Positions 5,190 to 53,253 of a stretch of 64,000 bases of DNA are shown piece after piece (positions within the stretch are counted from its first letter, which is position 1; the number at the start of each line of letters is the position of its first letter). Made by a program: the position numbers and the translations under genes. The notes below the pieces were generated by a model. It was not told the origin of the DNA and did not search any database. It saw nothing but the letters and a program-made list of their open reading frames with translations. The DNA is taken from positions 1-64,000 of IMG/VR virus record IMGVR_UViG_3300042934_000547; one strand, given 5' to 3'.

Positions 5190-5321
5190 TAAAAAAAATA
5201 AAGAGTTGGGAGCTCCTTATTTTTCTCTTTCTCTTCTTCCGTTAATTTGTGCTAAATTATCTTCAAGTTCCTTTAGTGTGTGGTAAATGTATCCAATGAA
5301 AATGAAGATATTGTCCCAAAT

Positions 5322-5396
5322 CTAATCTTCATAATCTGTCTCGTCATACGATGGATCTAAATAGATATCATCATACTCTTCATAATCATTGTACAT
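5322..5396 (-). CDS. Small acidic Tyr-rich peptide MYNDYEEYDDIYLDPSYDETDYED (24 aa), missed by the ORF track
   Basis: Strong AGGAGGTGA RBS upstream of the ATG at 5396; TAG stop; only plausible target of the early promoter at 5518-5551. Confidence 0.55.
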   Translation of the reverse strand: MYNDYEEYDDIYLDPSYDETDYED

Positions 5397-5517
5397 TTAC
5401 TGTCACCTCCTCTGCTGTCAATCTAACCTGTTAGGGTAAATTGTGATTCGAAAGGAGATAAAGGGTATTTTAAGTGGGTTGTTGTTTAAATACCCTCAAA
5501 TATCCAGTTCATATATA

Positions 5518-5551
5518 TATAATATACACTTAAAAAAGCTAAATTTTGCAG
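5518..5551 (-). promoter_or_regulatory. Early-type promoter CTGCAA-N17-TGTATATTATA
   Basis: Same bipartite motif and 17-nt spacer as at 17389, 21278, 34806 and 43577. Confidence 0.6.
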
Positions 5552-5560
5552 TAGAAATAT

Positions 5561-5586
5561 TAGGGTAGGTTTATAAACCTACCCTA
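5561..5586. terminator. Palindromic terminator
   Basis: Perfect 26-bp palindrome TAGGGTAGGTTTA/TAAACCTACCCTA just past the RNAP gene stop. Confidence 0.75.
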
Positions 5587-5597
5587 GTTTTATTATC

Positions 5598-7172
5598 TCA
5601 AAATTGCATAGGTTGTAACTTCTCACTTGTGTAGGTCAAAGCATATACAGCATGTATTGCTTCATCCTTAGCTTGCCTAGAGTTTGTTCCTGTTAATCCG
5701 ATTAGATATTTCTTACTATGAATGTATGAACGTATTTCTTCATTTGCCTCATCAGTATATACACCTTTTACAGTTACCTGATCACCGTCGTAATCTCCGC
5801 CAATTGGTATAAGATGAAGATTAGAGAACCGTAATGTATCAATAAACATATTTGATGTATTTGTTCCTATATCCTCTTCATTTATTATCGGATATCTACT
5901 AAACTTACCAAGTCTATCAACTATTATGGATTTCTCAGTATGTTTTGTTGAAGATATGGAAACCTTAGTTGCAAATTGTCCAAAATGTGATTCTATAGGA
6001 TAACGGGTAATCGTTATATGACGATTTTTGACAGATTCTGAACAAGCCATAAAAATTATATCAATCCATAATAATTTACGGCTAATTACTCTACCATCTT
6101 CAGTTTTATAACGGATTTTTGGATGTATAATCTTACCATCTTCAGTTTCCACTGATACTGGAACCAATCGATTAGCGAATCCTTTTATGAATCTATCAAG
6201 TTCTTGCTTTAGTATGTAATCTGTAAATTGCCCATCAATACTTTTTAACCGTACAGGTTCTCCATTATACATCGCTTTATTATCTTCAAAGAATCTTCGT
6301 ATAATGAGTTTCATATTAAAGATATTAAACGGATAAAAAGCAACTGCTGTGGCAGCTAAAGGTACCGATGCTGTATATAAATCACATTCTAAATCATCGA
6401 CAGATTCAACGTTTACATCAGGACAAGTGATAACCAATCTAACTGCATAATCTGTAGTTTTACTCATACCAGCTCTGGCAGTAATACCACCCTTTTTAGC
6501 TAAATTAGGTTCTCTTGTAAACCAATCATATATTGCAACTAATAACGATTGTGTTCGATAGACTGTTGCACCATTCATATCCATTCCATAATCTATTAAG
6601 TCGGAAAGTGAATTGGAACTTATGATTAGTTTTGAGTAGAGTTTATTTATCTCACCAACACCGAATTTTCCATCGGCAGTATTAGCATCTCTAAAACCAG
6701 CAGGAATTACTATCCATTTATCAATAACTGCCAATTTGTCTTTAATCATTTTTTCAACGAATTTAATATTGATATCTCTCTTATTAGAATCCGTTGATTT
6801 AAATTTTATTTTATCTAAATTCTTAATAAGCCATTTGATTCCTGTGTTACCATTCTCAGCAGCTACGATATGACCGTTTTCATCAATTTTAAATGAACCT
6901 TGCTCAGCAATTATTTCATTAATTCTTCTATCCATTCTAGTCATTATGATATAAACTAGTGGATGTATAAATTGAGCTTTAAGATCGATATAAGCATATC
7001 TGTTTTTTCTGTCATTTATCGTAATTCCGAATATATCATTAGATAATAATCCATTAGGTGTCGGCAGATTATCCCTAACAAAATATACAGGATCGTAAAC
7101 TTCTTTTAAATTATTTAGTTTAATGAACTTATTCGTATCAAGTAAATTAAGAACTAAATTCTTCTGATTCAT
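5598..7172 (-). CDS. Phage multisubunit RNA polymerase beta'-like subunit (N-terminal part with catalytic loop; probably the virion RNAP type)
   Basis: GLLSNDIFG (beta' region A-like), WIVIPAGFR, ITRYP and catalytic GGDYDGDQ motif. Start placed at ATG 7172 (AGGTGA RBS). The virion-versus-non-virion assignment is inference. Confidence 0.9.
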   Translation of the reverse strand: MNQKNLVLNLLDTNKFIKLNNLKEVYDPVYFVRDNLPTPNGLLSNDIFGITINDRKNRYAYIDLKAQFIHPLVYIIMTRMDRRINEIIAEQGSFKIDENGHIVAAENGNTGIKWLIKNLDKIKFKSTDSNKRDINIKFVEKMIKDKLAVIDKWIVIPAGFRDANTADGKFGVGEINKLYSKLIISSNSLSDLIDYGMDMNGATVYRTQSLLVAIYDWFTREPNLAKKGGITARAGMSKTTDYAVRLVITCPDVNVESVDDLECDLYTASVPLAATAVAFYPFNIFNMKLIIRRFFEDNKAMYNGEPVRLKSIDGQFTDYILKQELDRFIKGFANRLVPVSVETEDGKIIHPKIRYKTEDGRVISRKLLWIDIIFMACSESVKNRHITITRYPIESHFGQFATKVSISSTKHTEKSIIVDRLGKFSRYPIINEEDIGTNTSNMFIDTLRFSNLHLIPIGGDYDGDQVTVKGVYTDEANEEIRSYIHSKKYLIGLTGTNSRQAKDEAIHAVYALTYTSEKLQPMQF

Positions 7173-7476
7173 ACGCTTCACCTACTTTTATAATAATTTT
7201 ATTATTATTATGTTGTTGGGACACGCAGATTGGGTATATTTTATTGTATTTACTGATGTATGTCATATTAGAAATAGCATTCCAAAATATATTACACTCT
7301 GATGGATTAATGATATTTATAATAAACTCAACATGATTATCATTTTCATTTACTATAACTGAATCCGCAGAGTATGTCATAATTGAATTTACAACCATTA
7401 TTGATTCAAAAGTTTTTAAAATTAATGCTATCAAATCATCAGTATGAATTTTATTAACAAAATTAATCACATCCAT
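7147..7476 (-). CDS. Hypothetical protein
   Basis: 109-aa ORF with GAGG RBS, overlapping the RNAP start. Confidence 0.6.
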   Translation of the reverse strand: MDVINFVNKIHTDDLIALILKTFESIMVVNSIMTYSADSVIVNENDNHVEFIINIINPSECNIFWNAISNMTYISKYNKIYPICVSQQHNNNKIIIKVGEAYESEEFSS

Positions 7477-9683: not shown

Positions 9684-9738
9684 TATTATATCGTTTTAGA
9701 TATTTAAATATTAATATTAAGTTTTTGACATATAAGTA
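9684..9738. promoter_or_regulatory. Divergent late-type promoters (AACG-N6-TA on minus at 9684-9695; GACA-N6-TA on plus at 9727-9738)
   Basis: Motif matches oriented toward each flanking gene. Confidence 0.5.
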
Positions 9739-9760
9739 ATTGTATATAGGAGGAATGAAT

Positions 9761-12202
9761 ATGTATATTCTAAACGAAAGAATGCGAAACGCCCGTAAAG
9801 GTCGTAGATTTAAATGTAAATACTGTAATGAGAGTTTAGAAATAGCTGATTTGATAATTCATATAGATGAGGAACATGATGATTTAATTCCAAAGGATAT
9901 GACTGCTGCACAGGTAGTATATAATACGGTGAACAAACGAGACCGAGGTTCTTGTTTGATATGTAAAAGGGAAACCAAATGGGATGAAGAAAAATGGAGA
10001 TACGATTCATTATGTGGAAGACAGAAATGTTATGATGAATATATAGCTAGATTTAGGTCTAATATGAAACGTACTGGTAAAGATGATCAAATGAATAATC
10101 CGGAACATCAAAAGAAAATGCTCGAAGGACGCAAAATATCGGGTACTTATAAATTCGCCGATGGTGGTGTTAAATCCTATGTTGCTACTTATGAAAAACA
10201 GCTATTAGAGTTTTTAGATAAAGTATGTAATATAAATTCAAAAGATTTAGAAACTCCCGGACCTACGATTGATTATAATTACAAGGGTGAGAAGAAGTTC
10301 TGGATTACCGATTTATATTATACTCCATTTAATCTGGTATTTGACGTTAAACCGGGTGGTGATAATAAGAATACGCATCCTGATATGGAAGAAAACCGTC
10401 AAAAACAAAAAGCAAAACAAGACCAAATTATTAAAGACGGTGTATATAATTATATTGAATTAACTGATAATAATTTTGCTCAGCTATTCACTATTCTTAA
10501 AGAGATTAAACTCAATATGTTTGACAATATAAATGATAAGGTCATTAAGATATATGAGGATACTCAAATGGGTTTAAAATATTTGATTCCGTATTCAGAT
10601 AATGGATATATAATTACTGGATATGCTGCTAGTAATAGTATATTGATGGAAGATCTATTCATTGAAGAGAATGGAAAGATGATAAGAAAAGATAAATCTT
10701 TTCTGGAAGATAAATCTTACACAATATATAAAGGTGATTTATATGACGGAACCACATCTACTATATTAGAAGCATTTGGGATTGAATTACCATCTGATAT
10801 AAATTATCTACAAAAGATTTATGATAATAACGGGAAATATGATTTATCTGATATTCTTAAACACGAAGAATTTAAGAATAAGAATACAAACCAGATAGAA
10901 TCATTAGTTGAATCAGCATTACTGAATGAAGTAAATACTAAAGAGGAAATGACAATAACTAATGATTACCCAGACAATGATGAACCAATAAATGAGTCAT
11001 ATATATTTAATCAGAAAGATTTATATATTAATTTTGATAAATTTGAATCTGGTCAATCTAATATGGTATTTATTACAGGATTATCTGGTGGAGGTAAATC
11101 AACTCTAGCTACTAAATTGGCAAGTAAATATAATGCAGAAGTTATAGAGTTAGATATATTCGAGCATAATGCTGGATATACCGATGAAAACCTCAATCAA
11201 GCAGGTGACGTATTTGTAGAATATTTCTTGAATAAACGCAAAGATTTGAGAGTGCCTATTAAAAAATTAGCTAATATGGATTCAAAAACATTTCGTATGG
11301 AATTCGAGAAATTCTTCAATTTTGTAATAGAATATTGTAAGAAAAATAAAGACAGGAAATTTATAATAGAAGGGGTTCAGATATACAGTAGGGACTTAAA
11401 ACAAATCAAAGGAAATCCAATAATATTGGTTAATACATCAGTAAAAACTTCATTACTTCAACGTTTTAAACGTAATGATTTTGATGGTAATAAAATTGAT
11501 TGGAAAGCTGAATTAAAAAATGAATTTCCTCAATTAATTTCTTGGTATATAGATAATGAGCATGAATACAGTAGATTTAAAAAAGAATTATTAGCAGAGG
11601 ATGTTGGACATGAAAATTTTAGCACCTTGTATTATCTCAGTGCTGAAAAGTTGGATGATGATGAATTAATTGTTCACCCATCGAATCATCCTCCTATATA
11701 TATTCATAAAAATACTTATAGTGCCCAGAAAAAGATTTTAACTTCTACTAGTGTTGAGAAACTATTGAGATTGGTACCTACTAACTTTAAAAACAGAATA
11801 TTTCATATTTATGAACCTTTCTATTATCCTGATATCATATATGAAATACCATCTTCAAATCAATATGAAGATGTGCAACTGACTGATGTTGTATGGATAA
11901 CTAACGATTGTAAAATGAGCTATGTTGGTGCGATACTGCTCAAGGAACCAGATTTATCAGAACCTATGGCAAGTTCGGATCATAAGGTTGGAGTATTATA
12001 TGACTGGAATTGGTCATGGGAAAATAAACCTAATACTTCAGATTTAACCAATACAATCGTAGAAAATACTAATATACTCGATTCAATCAGAAAGAATGTC
12101 AATACCATTCCTCCAGTTCGTTTATCAGAATCAGAGGAAATTAATACTTATCAAGGTTTACTGGAGGATTTTACTCAATACTCTAACATATTTATTGAAT
12201 AA
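9761..12202 (+). CDS. Multidomain protein: C2H2/Cys zinc fingers + PD-(D/E)xK nuclease-like domain + P-loop kinase + degenerate ADP-ribosyltransferase-like C-terminal domain
   Basis: CKYC...HIDEEH; CLIC...CGRQKC; ITDLYYTPFNLVFDVK; Walker A GLSGGGKST; C-terminal LYYLS...TSTS...DVQLTDVVWIT. Start moved to ATG 9761 (AGGAGGA RBS). Confidence 0.6.
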   Translation: MYILNERMRNARKGRRFKCKYCNESLEIADLIIHIDEEHDDLIPKDMTAAQVVYNTVNKRDRGSCLICKRETKWDEEKWRYDSLCGRQKCYDEYIARFRSNMKRTGKDDQMNNPEHQKKMLEGRKISGTYKFADGGVKSYVATYEKQLLEFLDKVCNINSKDLETPGPTIDYNYKGEKKFWITDLYYTPFNLVFDVKPGGDNKNTHPDMEENRQKQKAKQDQIIKDGVYNYIELTDNNFAQLFTILKEIKLNMFDNINDKVIKIYEDTQMGLKYLIPYSDNGYIITGYAASNSILMEDLFIEENGKMIRKDKSFLEDKSYTIYKGDLYDGTTSTILEAFGIELPSDINYLQKIYDNNGKYDLSDILKHEEFKNKNTNQIESLVESALLNEVNTKEEMTITNDYPDNDEPINESYIFNQKDLYINFDKFESGQSNMVFITGLSGGGKSTLATKLASKYNAEVIELDIFEHNAGYTDENLNQAGDVFVEYFLNKRKDLRVPIKKLANMDSKTFRMEFEKFFNFVIEYCKKNKDRKFIIEGVQIYSRDLKQIKGNPIILVNTSVKTSLLQRFKRNDFDGNKIDWKAELKNEFPQLISWYIDNEHEYSRFKKELLAEDVGHENFSTLYYLSAEKLDDDELIVHPSNHPPIYIHKNTYSAQKKILTSTSVEKLLRLVPTNFKNRIFHIYEPFYYPDIIYEIPSSNQYEDVQLTDVVWITNDCKMSYVGAILLKEPDLSEPMASSDHKVGVLYDWNWSWENKPNTSDLTNTIVENTNILDSIRKNVNTIPPVRLSESEEINTYQGLLEDFTQYSNIFIE

Positions 12203-12220
12203 TTTTTCACAAACGCATCT

Positions 12221-12640
12221 AACCATATAATAAGCATTCTAATAATCTATTATTAGGAGAGCTATTATATCACTATATGCTCTAACTTGTATATTATACA
12301 CTTGTACTGAGTGAGTATGTTTGTTTAATATAAAATCCATCAATTAAATCAAGCTAAGCTCAACGATAAATGATTTCTTAGGACTTTGATTATTGATATT
12401 TTTGTGTTACAAACCGTTGTAGTATACTTATGATAGTACACAAACAATTAACGCACTAGCCAATTTATCCCCCGATAAGATTTAACTATTTGAAGTTAAG
12501 TGCGTTAATTATTTTGGCAATAAGAAACTGACACCTCCGTTTCTTTTAATATAAATTGACTCCTTTTGGTTAAGACTCATTTGTTTTTAATTCTATTTGC
12601 CTCCCGGGAGTGGATTAATTTCCACTCCCACCTTTTTTCA
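12221..12640 (+). ncRNA. Candidate ~400-nt structured non-coding RNA
   Basis: Late-type promoter AACC-N6-TA (12221-12232); no ORF with a usable RBS; several perfect stems (12446-12457/12499-12510 enclosing two hairpins; 12522-12545); plus-strand terminator at 12606-12638. Confidence 0.45.
12606..12638 (+). terminator. Intrinsic terminator
   Basis: GGGAGTGGA-ttaatt-TCCACTCCC followed by ACCTTTTTT. Confidence 0.8.
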
Positions 12641-12661
12641 AAAAAAAAATAAAGTATGGAA

Positions 12662-13279
12662 TTAACCATGCTTTATGATATTATCAATAAGTGATTCACG
12701 AGATTTCATAAATTCATCAAGAGTGTTATAATCTTTCCAAAGAAACGATAAATCATTATATGATCTAGTTAATAATTTATTTATCCGTCCCTTTATCAGA
12801 TAATCAGGTTTATTAAATGTATCTAATGTAAATTTCTCTAAACAGTAGCTAATCAATCCTATATTATTTACGATTATACAACTTATGAAATGCTCAGGGT
12901 TAACTCTAAATGCCTTGGTCTGTTTAACAATTTCGAATAACCTTTTAGTATTCATAGTATACAACATACCCCCGATGATATATGGGGCTACATATTCACC
13001 AATTTCCCTATTATATGATTCACTATCAATATCAATTAATTCATATAATGATTTATAGAATTTGCTGTCATAGAGTTCTATCATGTCAAAAGTTGTTATA
13101 TTTGAATCTGCATATAATAGGTTTTCAAATAGGTCCTTCACACTTCTTAAATCATTGGTTACTTTAAATCGGTCTAACCAATCTGCTATATTATCGAGAG
13201 TCTTCCAGTATTCACCCATCTTAATTCCATAGCCTAGTTTAGCATTTATGAATTGAATTTTACCAGTACATTTTTTCAT
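12662..13279 (-). CDS. Hypothetical protein (early operon)
   Basis: 205-aa ORF coupled to the upstream gene by a TAATG overlap. Confidence 0.65.
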   Translation of the reverse strand: MKKCTGKIQFINAKLGYGIKMGEYWKTLDNIADWLDRFKVTNDLRSVKDLFENLLYADSNITTFDMIELYDSKFYKSLYELIDIDSESYNREIGEYVAPYIIGGMLYTMNTKRLFEIVKQTKAFRVNPEHFISCIIVNNIGLISYCLEKFTLDTFNKPDYLIKGRINKLLTRSYNDLSFLWKDYNTLDEFMKSRESLIDNIIKHG

Positions 13280-13953: not shown

Positions 13954-14520
13954 TTATCTATTCCACCATTGGTCAACTTCGTTTGAATCATCTCCAGTTT
14001 CTTCCTGACATATATTTTCATTACTATTATAGATAGTCTCTATTTGTTTTAATGAACCCATATTATCATAAAGATAATTATTTCTTTTACCATTTGAATA
14101 GTTAACATGAATCAAATTATCTTTATCATCATATTCCATCATTTCTTCATAATTGTTTGAAGTTTTTATTCTGATTAGATTATTTCGTTCGTCGTAACTG
14201 TAATTTACTTCAAATCCTTCCTCATCCCTATAATGAACCAATCTACCTTCTTCATCATATGAACTCCACTGTTGATGGTTATCTGTGTCTTTATAATAAG
14301 TGATATTATTATCCTTATTATATTCATGCCATGATTGGAATCCATTGGAATTTTTAGTATGAATTAGATTACCTTTATCGTCATACTCTTTCCACATCTC
14401 GATTCCATTTAAAAACTTGACATATACTTCCTTTCCAAAATCGTCATATCTGCGTATAGGTAGTAATTCACCTGCGATATATTTTCGTTTGCTATCAAAT
14501 AATTCCAATACTCTACTCAT
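13954..14520 (-). CDS. Stand-alone YD/RHS-repeat protein
   Basis: About six 21-aa repeats of the form (E/S)YDxxG(N/R)L(I/V)HxxxxxG; GGAGG RBS. Confidence 0.75.
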   Translation of the reverse strand: MSRVLELFDSKRKYIAGELLPIRRYDDFGKEVYVKFLNGIEMWKEYDDKGNLIHTKNSNGFQSWHEYNKDNNITYYKDTDNHQQWSSYDEEGRLVHYRDEEGFEVNYSYDERNNLIRIKTSNNYEEMMEYDDKDNLIHVNYSNGKRNNYLYDNMGSLKQIETIYNSNENICQEETGDDSNEVDQWWNR

Positions 14521-52239: not shown

Positions 52240-53253
52240 CTATCTATTCATTATGAGAATCTCTATTAATTCTATTTCATCAGTAGTCTTATTTTGTAGA
52301 GATTTACCTACAATAGTACCGGGAATATTTTCTATCGATTTCATTCCTACACCTTCTATATCGGATGAAGTAATTAAATCTCCAATTTCTATCTTTCCAG
52401 TAATATATACTTTCAATCTACCAGCCAAACCAATAGGGATATAATTTTTCAAATTATCTTCATTTGATACGTCTTTATCCCCACCTAATAAGAATCCATA
52501 ATTGTCAGAAACAACACCTACTATCTTTTTAGAATTAGCTGATGATGAATAACAATATGTATTAGTGTCTGGTTCTAACTCGATAATATGATTAGGTTCG
52601 TAAGTGACATCTGGTTTATGTTTCTTAAATAACTCAGCGTAGTCATTCCATACAGCATTAGTTATTAAATCCCCTTCAATCCAGACTTTTTTCATTACAG
52701 CACCCATTGACCAACCACCAACAGCTAATGCATTACTCTTGTTTAACCCAAAATTTAATGCATATGCACCCGCTCGGTGAAATGATATAAAGGCGGCTGA
52801 TGCACTGTCTGAACGTATTTCTAGACCACCAGCTGCATATGCTGGTGAATAACTAACATCGGCACCACCAACAATTGCAGCTGTGAATAATCTACTACTA
52901 AGCGTTCCACCAGCAATGCCGTCTCTCCATAATGATTTATTTTTAAATCTGATATCAGTATTACCATTAGTTATTGATAATCCTACTGCTGGGAAATCAC
53001 TACTACCTTGTGCAACACCCCAAACGTTATTTGGGTCTGTGTAAATACCCCAAGCCTGAGTTTCTATTCCCTGAATATCAGCTGTTGGGGTTAATCCCAT
53101 GAGAATATCAGTCCAACCACCACTACTACTTTTAGATATTCTAATTCCTTCCTGATAATTATTTTCAGAAGGTTTAAGTATTAATCGTTTAAGATATGAA
53201 TTACCATTAACATTTAAGCTTCCATTTACAATAGTTGAATTTAACCTACCCAA
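52240..53253 (-). CDS. Tail fibre / receptor-binding protein A with C-terminal intramolecular chaperone (Peptidase_G2-like) domain
   Basis: MGRLNST N-terminus; SFHRAGAYALNFGL...GGWSMG fibre motif; NAVWNDYAELF autocleavage-type motif; TTG start. Confidence 0.75.
   Translation of the reverse strand: MGRLNSTIVNGSLNVNGNSYLKRLILKPSENNYQEGIRISKSSSGGWTDILMGLTPTADIQGIETQAWGIYTDPNNVWGVAQGSSDFPAVGLSITNGNTDIRFKNKSLWRDGIAGGTLSSRLFTAAIVGGADVSYSPAYAAGGLEIRSDSASAAFISFHRAGAYALNFGLNKSNALAVGGWSMGAVMKKVWIEGDLITNAVWNDYAELFKKHKPDVTYEPNHIIELEPDTNTYCYSSSANSKKIVGVVSDNYGFLLGGDKDVSNEDNLKNYIPIGLAGRLKVYITGKIEIGDLITSSDIEGVGMKSIENIPGTIVGKSLQNKTTDEIELIEILIMNR

What the first reader, a model, noticed from the sequence alone, without database searches (positions are those of the whole stretch)
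12221..12640. Candidate ~400-nt structured phage RNA with C-rich / anti-Shine-Dalgarno loops
Seen: the largest ORF-free gap in the window has its own late-type promoter (AACC-N6-TA) and a plus-strand terminator. It contains a 12-bp stem (12446-12457/12499-12510) enclosing two hairpins (one with a CCCC loop), a 7-bp stem with loop TGACACCTCC (12522-12545), a TTTGTGT/ACACAAA stem (12400-12444), and further CTCCTT and CCTCCC motifs. Established: Firmicute sRNAs such as RNAIII and RsaE/RoxS use unpaired C-rich loops to pair with Shine-Dalgarno sequences. Inference: a phage translational regulator. Read on the minus strand, the same loops would display GGA motifs like CsrB-type sponges.
Basis: partly seen in the sequence, partly recalled or inferred. 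Interest (0 to 1): 0.65.

Follow-up and report, generated by a model that had tools for sequence, protein, structure and literature searches.

The report
Structured non-coding tail in jumbo phage
A 459-base gene-free stretch of an uncultured AR9-like jumbo phage folds into strong hairpins with exposed C-rich loops and is probably the RNA tail of a late gene. Its claimed own promoter is weak, and neither its expression nor any function could be tested.

Summary
Window 12203-12661 is the largest ORF-free gap in the window. It has no coding signal and folds far better than shuffles (z -6.7 with the terminator, -4.0 without). It contains the described three-way junction, the CACCUCC-loop hairpin and a plus-strand terminator. 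C-rich motifs are enriched (5 against 1.7 expected, P 0.006) and predicted to be unpaired.

The claimed promoter does not hold up well. The phage is a distant relative of AR9 and uses AR9's early and late (AACA-N6-TA) promoter motifs. The gap's AACC variant changes position -8, which is essential in AR9. It scores 5 bits, below more than 200 other sites in the genome.

Two terminators sit back to back at about 12638-12640, so the gap belongs to the plus-strand unit. No terminator separates it from the 820-aa gene, so the default reading is a roughly 430-nt structured 3' UTR (genome median 37 nt).

There is no Rfam match, no paralogue and no close relative anywhere. Anti-Shine-Dalgarno regulation is plausible but unproven.

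A separate unit at genome 217,991-218,505 is a stronger candidate for a stand-alone ncRNA gene.

The parts
9740..12202 (+). Upstream gene, 820-aa ORF (likely start ATG 9761). It has an N-terminal Zn-finger endonuclease like AR9 g233, a P-loop kinase-like centre and a C-terminal repeat domain. A late-promoter-like GACA-N6-TAA lies at 9727-9739.
12221..12232 (+). Late-promoter-like AACCATATAATA, 19 nt after the stop codon. It matches the local extended consensus AACAATATAATA at 11 of 12 positions, but the mismatch is at -8.
   Evidence: PMC5449584
12215..12280 (+). 5' imperfect hairpin (32-nt arms, 72% complementary) with inner stem UUCUAAUAA/UUAUUAGGA. Fold z is -3.25.
12303..12441 (+). Long irregular helix of about 51 pairs. 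Folded alone it gives -35.0 kcal/mol (z -3.8) on plus and -23.0 (z -1.2) on minus, with 6 G.U pairs against 2.
12442..12514 (+). Three-way junction: a 16-bp closing stem, a hairpin UUAUC-CCCC-GAUAA (C-run 12469-12473) and a hairpin UUAAC-N6-GUUAA. Fold z is -5.2.
12522..12545 (+). 7-bp hairpin with loop UGACACCUCC. CCUCC lies at 12534-12538. As I recall it, the loop reproduces the 16S rRNA anti-SD core CACCUCC.
12560..12567 (+). Mostly single-stranded CUCCUUUU motif.
12600..12605 (+). CCUCCC motif immediately 5' of the terminator stem.
12606..12638 (+). Intrinsic terminator GGGAGUGGA-UUAAUU-UCCACUCCC plus U-run, -18.4 kcal/mol. It carries the TTAATT-type loop that is common among this phage's terminators.
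12640..12676 (-). Terminator of the converging minus-strand operon: a stem pairing 10 of 11 positions, a UUAAUU loop that contains the stop codon of the 205-aa gene, then about U10-11. It lies outside the gap.

Best explanation
The gap is a non-coding, strongly folded RNA segment made from the plus strand as the 3' end of the late transcription unit of the 820-aa endonuclease/ATPase gene.

Transcription most likely starts at the gene's late-type promoter (about 9727-9739). It runs through the stop codon at 12202 because no terminator follows it. It then passes about 400 nt of hairpins and ends at the canonical terminator at 12606-12638. That terminator abuts the separate terminator of the converging operon. 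Some initiation at the near-consensus AACC-N6-TA site (12221) is possible but not needed.

Inferred function: the 3' half (three-way junction, CACCUCC hairpin, CUCCUUUU, CCUCCC, terminator) acts as an RNA, either as a UTR or after processing out of the long helix. Its four exposed C-rich motifs would pair with G-rich Shine-Dalgarno regions of phage or host mRNAs late in infection. The hairpins would also protect the transcript's 3' end.

Shown here: the stretch is non-coding, it is structured, the terminators are arranged back to back, and C-rich motifs are enriched. Inferred only: transcription, processing and targets.
For: - No ORF with an SD, and coding score below that of shuffles.
- Fold z of -6.7 with the terminator and -4.0 without it.
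- The plus-strand terminator resembles others in this phage. The minus-strand operon has its own terminator at 12676-12640.
- No terminator lies between 12202 and 12606.
- The stop-to-terminator distance is 430 nt against a genome median of 37 nt.
- The 12300-12445 helix, folded alone, is 12 kcal/mol more stable on plus.
- C-rich clusters number 5 against 1.72 expected, P 0.0055, and are mostly unpaired.
- Several phage genes have matching SDs, GGGGGAUAA(A) and GGGAGGUGU. Top-5 duplex energies beat shuffled queries by about 2-3 sd.
- Another ORF-free unit in the same genome has a terminator, a consensus late promoter and a terminator of its own. This suggests the phage makes long late ncRNAs.
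Against: - There are no expression data and no relatives for a covariation test.
- Whole-gap folding energy is symmetric between the strands, so the structure alone does not fix the strand.
- C-rich motifs on plus are also SD-like motifs on minus.
- Target predictions are only about 2-3 sd above shuffled queries, and any C-rich loop matches any SD.
- No syntenic counterpart exists in AR9, LPJP1 or metagenomic relatives.
Confidence: 0.5

Rival explanations
1. Stand-alone late ncRNA gene. The RNA starts at the AACC-N6-TA site (TSS about 12232) and ends at 12638, giving a discrete transcript of about 410 nt.
For: - The site matches the phage's extended late motif AACAATATAATA at 11 of 12 positions.
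- The class AAC.ATATAAT occurs 12 times in the genome. Six copies are in the 6.5% that is intergenic. Two of these are -8 variants sitting 50 and 72 nt upstream of genes.
- -11 variants (GACA) are tolerated here.
- The unit at 217,991 shows that this gene plan exists in this phage.
Against: - In AR9, any change at -8 abolishes transcription (PMC5449584).
- AACC-N6-TR is not enriched upstream of genes, with a ratio of 0.023 against 0.107 for AACA.
- The PWM score is 5.0 bits, below more than 200 other sites.
- No terminator separates it from the upstream gene, unlike the unit at 217,991.
- The early-like motif at 12290 scores -4.4.
Confidence: 0.2
2. Functionless leftover. The gap is debris from lost small genes of the minus-strand operon. 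Its GGAGG-type motifs on minus would be relic ribosome-binding sites and its hairpins relic terminators or chance palindromes.
For: - The C-rich motifs read as good SDs on minus (GGAGGUG, AAGGAG, GGGAGG).
- In another long gap (72921-73473), the same plus-strand C-rich pattern is explained by real small minus-strand genes.
- The neighbours are orphan genes, and the region is lineage-specific.
Against: - No start codon sits at a proper distance from any of these motifs.
- The best coding score, 5.1, is below the shuffled median of 7.2.
- tblastn with 121 related proteins finds nothing.
- The motifs sit inside perfect 5-16-bp inverted repeats, and the fold has z of -4 to -6.7.
- The minus operon already ends at its own terminator upstream of the gap.
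Confidence: 0.17
3. DNA-level element. The cluster of palindromes would act as a cruciform or protein-binding site, for example in replication or packaging, or as a buffer between converging polymerases.
For: - Fold scores are as strong on minus as on plus for the whole gap.
- The 16-bp stem is a near-perfect DNA palindrome.
- Four of 21 convergent junctions in the genome are unusually long.
Against: - There are no iterons or direct repeats and no copies elsewhere in the genome.
- The other 17 convergent junctions need only 16-127 nt.
- The 12300-12445 helix depends on G.U pairs, which have no counterpart in DNA.
Confidence: 0.08
4. Minus-strand RNA displaying GGA or SD-like loops, acting as a CsrB-type protein sponge or a ribosome decoy.
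For: - On minus, the loops read GGGG and GGAGGUGUCA.
- The three-way junction is more stable on minus, -24.1 against -17.9 kcal/mol.
- An AACA-N6-TA match lies on minus at 12408.
Against: - The minus operon terminates at 12676-12640, before the gap.
- The 12408 site lies downstream of the loops, and about 0.3 such matches per strand are expected by chance (frequency).
- No minus-strand terminator closes such an RNA.
- There are only 3-4 motifs, whereas I recall CsrB/RsmZ-type sponges carrying many more.
Confidence: 0.05

Closest known systems
RsaE/RoxS and S. aureus RNAIII (Firmicute sRNAs with C-rich loops), and prophage-borne SprX
   Same: Several unpaired C-rich motifs (CCCC, CCUCC, CUCC) sit in hairpin loops or linkers. 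The region ends in a Rho-independent terminator. The context is low-GC with AGGAGG-type SDs. At about 410 nt with about 6 helices, it is closer in size to RNAIII.
   Different: No covariance-model match to any Rfam family, even at E up to 10. It is encoded by a virulent-type jumbo phage. It is probably a 3' UTR rather than an autonomous gene. No target has been shown.
3'UTR-derived sRNAs of bacteria (processed from mRNA 3' ends and sharing the mRNA's terminator)
   Same: The RNA module lies between a stop codon and the gene's terminator, with no intervening terminator. The long helix at 12303-12441 could be a processing site.
   Different: Processing is purely inferred. At 430 nt the tail is about 12 times the genome's median stop-to-terminator distance.
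AR9 late transcription units (AACA-N6-TA/G promoters read by the non-virion RNAP; PMC5312081, PMC5449584)
   Same: This phage has the same early consensus, AAATATATATTAT-N6-G, and AACA-N6-TA is enriched upstream of its genes. It uses hairpin-plus-U terminators.
   Different: The site in the gap has C at -8. The AR9 transcriptome paper reports antisense RNAs but never uses the words 'noncoding' or 'non-coding'. AR9's long ORF-free gaps are group I introns, which this phage lacks.
Large structured RNAs often carried by phages (GOLLD, ROOL, group I introns)
   Same: A long, well-folded, ORF-free stretch in a phage genome.
   Different: No match to any Rfam family in the window at gathering thresholds, or in the gap at E up to 10. 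GOLLD and ROOL are, as far as I recall, Rfam families and so were covered by those scans. The same library finds 9 group I introns in AR9 as a positive control. The gap lies between convergent genes, so it cannot be an intron.

Membership tests
RsaE/RoxS, RNAIII, SprX and other curated sRNA families (Rfam) | Match to the family covariance model at or near its gathering score | tested here: not met
   cmscan of the window at gathering thresholds gave 0 hits. Over 12100-12750 at E up to 10 there were only chance-level hits to unrelated families, all far below gathering.
RsaE/RoxS-type anti-SD sRNAs (functional class) | Several unpaired C-rich motifs complementary to SD sequences | tested here: met
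   Motifs at 12469-12473, 12532-12538, 12560-12567 and 12600-12605 have mean unpaired probability 0.72-0.80. Enrichment P is 0.0055.
RsaE/RoxS-type anti-SD sRNAs (functional class) | Discrete, independently detectable transcript that represses translation of target mRNAs | not testable with these tools
The phage is known from a single metagenomic record.
AR9-type late promoter | A(-11)ACA(-8)-N6-T(-1)A/G(+1), with all four AACA positions essential | tested here: not met
   The site reads AACC ATATAA TA, with C at -8. AACC is not enriched upstream of genes. PWM score is 5.0 bits. The requirement is taken from PMC5449584.
AR9-type early promoter | AAATATATATTAT-N6-G | tested here: not met
   The 12290 site has 3 of 13 mismatches and a PWM score of -4.4. 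About 45 true sites score between 12 and 51.
Intrinsic (Rho-independent) terminator | GC-rich stem, short loop, U-run directly after the stem on the transcribed strand | tested here: met
   12606-12629 has 9 bp (6 GC) and a 6-nt loop, followed by ACCUUUUUUC. Energy is -18.4 kcal/mol, z -5.3.
Group I intron | Match to RF00028, and location inside a gene | tested here: not met
   No hit in the window or the whole genome. The positive control gave 9 hits in AR9. The gap lies between convergent genes.
CsrB/RsmZ-type protein sponge | Many GGA motifs in hairpin loops on the transcribed strand | tested here: inconclusive
   Only 3-4 G-rich loop motifs are present, and only on minus. The terminator layout argues that minus is not transcribed here, but no expression data exist.
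Conserved structured RNA (any) | Helices kept by compensatory changes in relatives | not testable with these tools
   No DNA or protein relative is close enough. The 205-aa neighbour is unique among 5.8 billion protein clusters. The nearest IMG/VR relatives are 40% identical in an RNAP subunit. A single-sequence CM finds nothing in 5 related records.

The most novel reading that the evidence does not exclude
A jumbo phage with its own RNA polymerases makes a late, roughly 200-430-nt RNA whose exposed loops copy the ribosome's anti-Shine-Dalgarno sequence (CACCUCC, CUCCUUU, CCUCCC, CCCCC). The RNA would mask the SDs of host or early-phage mRNAs. That would be an RNA-based switch of translation from early to late programmes. 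Together with the unrelated 500-nt late ncRNA at 217,991-218,505, it would form a previously unnoticed non-coding layer in AR9-like phages.
Probability: 0.15. Interest if true: 0.75.

Novelty: new member of a known kind. Interest (0 to 1): 0.4.

Why it matters
AR9/PBS1-like jumbo phages are models for virus-encoded multisubunit RNA polymerases and uracil-containing DNA. To my knowledge, no regulatory RNA has been described for them.

If this tail, and the stand-alone unit at 217,991, are real functional RNAs, they would add post-transcriptional control to a programme so far explained only by two polymerases and two promoter classes. They would also be a phage example of the C-rich anti-SD mechanism known from Firmicute sRNAs.

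If it is only a long structured UTR or debris, it is an ordinary feature of a fast-evolving, orphan-rich genome.

Tried and rejected
- **Rfam.** Scans at gathering thresholds and at E up to 10 found nothing meaningful. tRNA and tmRNA scans were empty.
- **DNA relatives.** blastn against 50,697 phage records gave no match for the gap. The second unit gave only one chance-level 45-nt hit. An exact-pattern scan of IMG/VR was empty.
- **Synteny.** I looked through flanking proteins. The 820-aa protein has only modular relatives sharing residues 1-606. The 205-aa protein is unique. The loci in AR9, Listeria phage LPJP1, a 267-kb ENA contig and a 68-kb contig have no equivalent gap.
- **Covariance model.** A single-sequence model of 12440-12550 found only itself in the genome and nothing in 5 related records.
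- **Paralogy.** The gap shows no similarity to the other structured gaps (z -0.5 to 2). It belongs to no repeat family.
- **Decayed C-terminus of the 820-aa gene.** tblastn with 121 proteins was negative.
- **Small proteins.** No ORF has an SD and the coding score is below that of shuffles.
- **Type I toxin-like peptides.** None is convincing.
- **Early promoter at 12290.** Rejected, with a PWM score of -4.4.
- **Sigma-70-like sites.** No more than chance, 9 found against 7.3 expected.
- **Long antisense complementarity to the phage's own genome.** None beyond chance.

Full report
**Context**

The window is the first 64 kb of a 231,975-bp IMG/VR virus record with direct terminal repeats. GC is about 30%. 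The record encodes a split multisubunit RNA polymerase (5598-7181, PHROG 'RNA polymerase beta subunit') and a ribonucleotide reductase.

The N-terminal 250 residues of the 820-aa ORF are 29-36% identical to the 'endonuclease fused to N-terminal Zn finger' of Bacillus phages AR9 and PBS1, of Staphylococcus jumbo phages, of Listeria phage LPJP1 and of other jumbo phages. The nearest IMG/VR relatives are only 40% identical in the RNAP subunit. The phage is therefore an isolated, distant member of the AR9-like jumbo phages.

**The observation**

The gap 12203-12661 lies between convergent genes: 9740-12202 on plus and 12662-13279 on minus. It is the largest ORF-free stretch in the window and the third largest in the genome.

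Every frame is broken into pieces of 34 codons or fewer. No piece has a Shine-Dalgarno at a proper distance. The best 90-nt codon-usage score is 5.1. That compares with a median of 7.2 for shuffles of the gap itself and 19.7 for real coding chunks.

- The closing stem is in fact 16 nt at 94% complementarity, 12442-12457/12499-12514. It encloses UUAUC-CCCC-GAUAA and a second hairpin.
- AAGAAAC/GUUUCUU closes the loop UGACACCUCC.

The whole stretch 12221-12640 folds with z -6.7 on plus and -5.5 on minus. Without the terminator, 12232-12600 gives z -4.0 and -4.9, with 0 of 100 shuffles as good.

C-rich motif clusters number five against 1.72 expected in dinucleotide shuffles, P 0.0055. The four outside the terminator are predicted to be mostly unpaired.

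**Promoters**

I derived the phage's promoters from the whole genome.

*Early promoters.* About 45 sites carry AAATATATATTAT-N6-G, often with an upstream TGTAAAA box. This is the AR9 early consensus word for word (PMC5312081).

*Late promoters.* AACA-N6-T(A/G), the AR9 late consensus, is enriched 25-70 nt upstream of start codons. There are 27 upstream sites against 253 in coding sequence. AACC-N6-TR shows only background levels, 5 against 218.

*The gap's site.* It reads AACC ATATAA TA (12221-12232). In AR9, substitutions at -11 to -8 abolish transcription in vitro (PMC5449584). In a PWM built from this phage's own sites, the gap site scores 5.0 bits, and more than 200 genome positions score above 6 bits.

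In its favour, it matches the local extended form AACAATATAATA at 11 of 12 positions. The word AAC..TATAAT occurs only 12 times in the genome, and six of those are in the 6.5% that is intergenic. Two of the six are -8 variants placed 50 and 72 nt before genes.

*Other candidates in the gap.* The early-like core at 12290 scores -4.4 and can be dismissed. Sigma-70-like matches are at chance level.

The gap's 'own promoter' is therefore possible but weak. I put it at about one in three.

**Which strand**

Folding energy over the whole gap does not decide the strand. The terminators do.

- On plus, 12606-12629 (GGGAGUGGA-UUAAUU-UCCACUCCC, -18.4 kcal/mol) is followed by ACCUUUUUUC. It resembles other terminators of this phage, about a third of which share the UUAAUU-type loop.
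- On minus, the converging operon ends in its own hairpin, 12676-12649, whose stem pairs 10 of 11 positions. Its loop UUAAUU contains the stop codon, and a run of about 10-11 U follows (12649-12640).

The two terminators therefore stand back to back at about 12638-12640, and the whole gap lies on the plus-strand side.

No terminator follows the stop codon of the 820-aa gene. That gene has a late-type GACA-N6-TAA 34 nt before its likely ATG at 9761, and GACA variants are enriched upstream of genes here. Its transcript should therefore run through the gap.

The stop-to-terminator distance is 430 nt, against a genome median of 37 nt and an interquartile range of 25-70 nt.

One module also favours plus when folded alone. 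The long helix 12300-12445 gives -35.0 kcal/mol (z -3.8) on plus and -23.0 (z -1.2) on minus, with six G.U pairs against two.

**What it is not**

- It matches no Rfam family. The same library recognises nine group I introns in 80 kb of AR9 and none in this phage.
- It is not a repeat or a paralogue.
- It is not a decayed C-terminus of the 820-aa gene. Homologues share residues 1-606 and then diverge, and tblastn of 121 related proteins against the gap is empty.
- It has no syntenic counterpart in AR9, LPJP1 or two metagenomic relatives.

**A sibling in the same genome**

Four of the 21 convergent junctions are long, at 408-579 nt.
- Two of them, 5190-5597 and 72921-73473, hold early promoters and small ORFs on minus.
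- The fourth, 217,927-218,505, is a textbook gene without an ORF. The upstream gene has its own terminator. Then comes a consensus AACAATATAATAG, then about 470 nt with a coding score of 2.6 and fold z of -7.3. The plus strand is 23 kcal/mol more stable than minus. A bidirectional terminator closes the unit.

That unit has no sequence similarity to the gap studied here and no Rfam or blastn relatives. It suggests the phage does make long late non-coding RNAs, which raises the prior for the present region.

**Mechanism**

The best-supported reading is a structured plus-strand RNA tail of the late 820-aa transcript. Its 3' half exposes CCCC, CACCUCC, CUCCUUUU and CCUCCC. From my own knowledge, CACCUCC is the core of the 16S rRNA anti-SD.

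SDs in this genome are AGGAGG-type. Several genes carry unusual SDs that match the loops over 9-10 nt: GGGGGAUAA(A) at genes starting at 142,063, 79,916 and 17,322, and GGGAGGUGU at 53,253. Their duplex energies are about 2-3 sd better than those of shuffled queries.

This fits the RsaE/RoxS/RNAIII way of working, but the evidence is weak and circular, because any C-rich loop matches any SD. On the opposite strand the same motifs are simply SD-like. That reading is what the debris hypothesis uses, and it is what explains the similar pattern in 72921-73473.

Against debris are three points: the motifs are embedded in perfect inverted repeats, start codons are lacking, and the coding score is sub-random.

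**Limits**

Covariation could not be examined because the phage has been seen once: the 205-aa neighbour has no homologue among 5.8 billion protein clusters. All functional statements are therefore inference.

**Verdict**

The region is real, non-coding, structured and oriented to the plus strand. It is most likely a long structured 3' UTR, possibly also an independent or processed late RNA. The anti-SD regulator idea is reasonable but unproven, and the promoter claim is weak.

Noticed in passing
L005:428-1006 (genome 217,927-218,505; outside the window): A stand-alone ORF-free transcription unit. The upstream gene has its own terminator (L005 445-470). Then come a consensus late promoter AACAATATAATAG (217,991) and about 470 nt with fold z -7.3, where plus is 23 kcal/mol more stable than minus and the coding score is 2.6. 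A bidirectional terminator closes it (L005 977-1000). It has no Rfam or blastn relatives. It is a stronger ncRNA gene candidate than the finding itself.
   Followed up: partly
L007:120-340 and 330-480 (genome ~175,019-175,240 and ~175,230-175,380): A tract of about 220 nt that is almost pure pyrimidine on plus, with runs such as CCCCCC and CCCCCCC (purine and G-runs on minus). A GC-rich structured piece follows (z -4.05). A consensus late promoter on minus at 175,417 lies 521 nt upstream of the next minus-strand gene, so this may be a very long purine-rich leader or another non-coding element.
   Followed up: partly
window 17397, 19389, 21286, 27696, 34814, 43585 (minus strand) and about 40 more sites genome-wide: The early promoters are identical to the AR9 consensus AAATATATATTAT-N6-G. 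They carry an additional conserved TGTAAAA box about 25 nt upstream.
   Followed up: yes
genome-wide; in the window e.g. 12606-12629, 24934, 40912, 43616: About a third of intergenic terminators (28 of 83) share a hairpin top of the form GGA-UUAAUU-UCC (GATTAATTTC). This hints at a preferred terminator loop for the phage polymerases.
   Followed up: partly
window 5190-5597: A second long convergent gap. It contains an early-like promoter on minus (5526) and a 24-aa, very acidic ORF with a good SD (5322-5396, minus), between two terminators.
   Followed up: partly
window 9727-9739 and other sites (e.g. 19414): GACA-N6-TAA variants of the late promoter sit at the usual distance before genes and are enriched there. 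The -11 position therefore seems less strict here than in AR9.
   Followed up: partly
whole genome (G000) against AR9 loci L020 and L023: This phage has no group I intron. AR9 has nine Rfam-level group I introns in the 80 kb scanned, and these account for AR9's long GC-rich ORF-free gaps.
   Followed up: yes
window 9740-12202: The 820-aa protein is a modular fusion: an AR9 g233-like Zn-finger endonuclease, a P-loop kinase-like domain, and a C-terminal domain that matches an internal segment of homologues. Relatives carry other C-terminal modules such as GNAT acetyltransferase or Nudix domains.
   Followed up: partly
window 12397-12408 (+): The plus-strand RNA would contain UA-N6-UGUU, the template-strand image of a late promoter, which the AR9 polymerase recognises on the template strand of uracil-containing DNA. 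The match is at chance level and is paired in the MFE, so I did not pursue it.
   Followed up: no
window 13954-14520 (-): The 188-aa protein has an RHS-repeat match (Pfam PF05593, E 4.5e-10).
   Followed up: no
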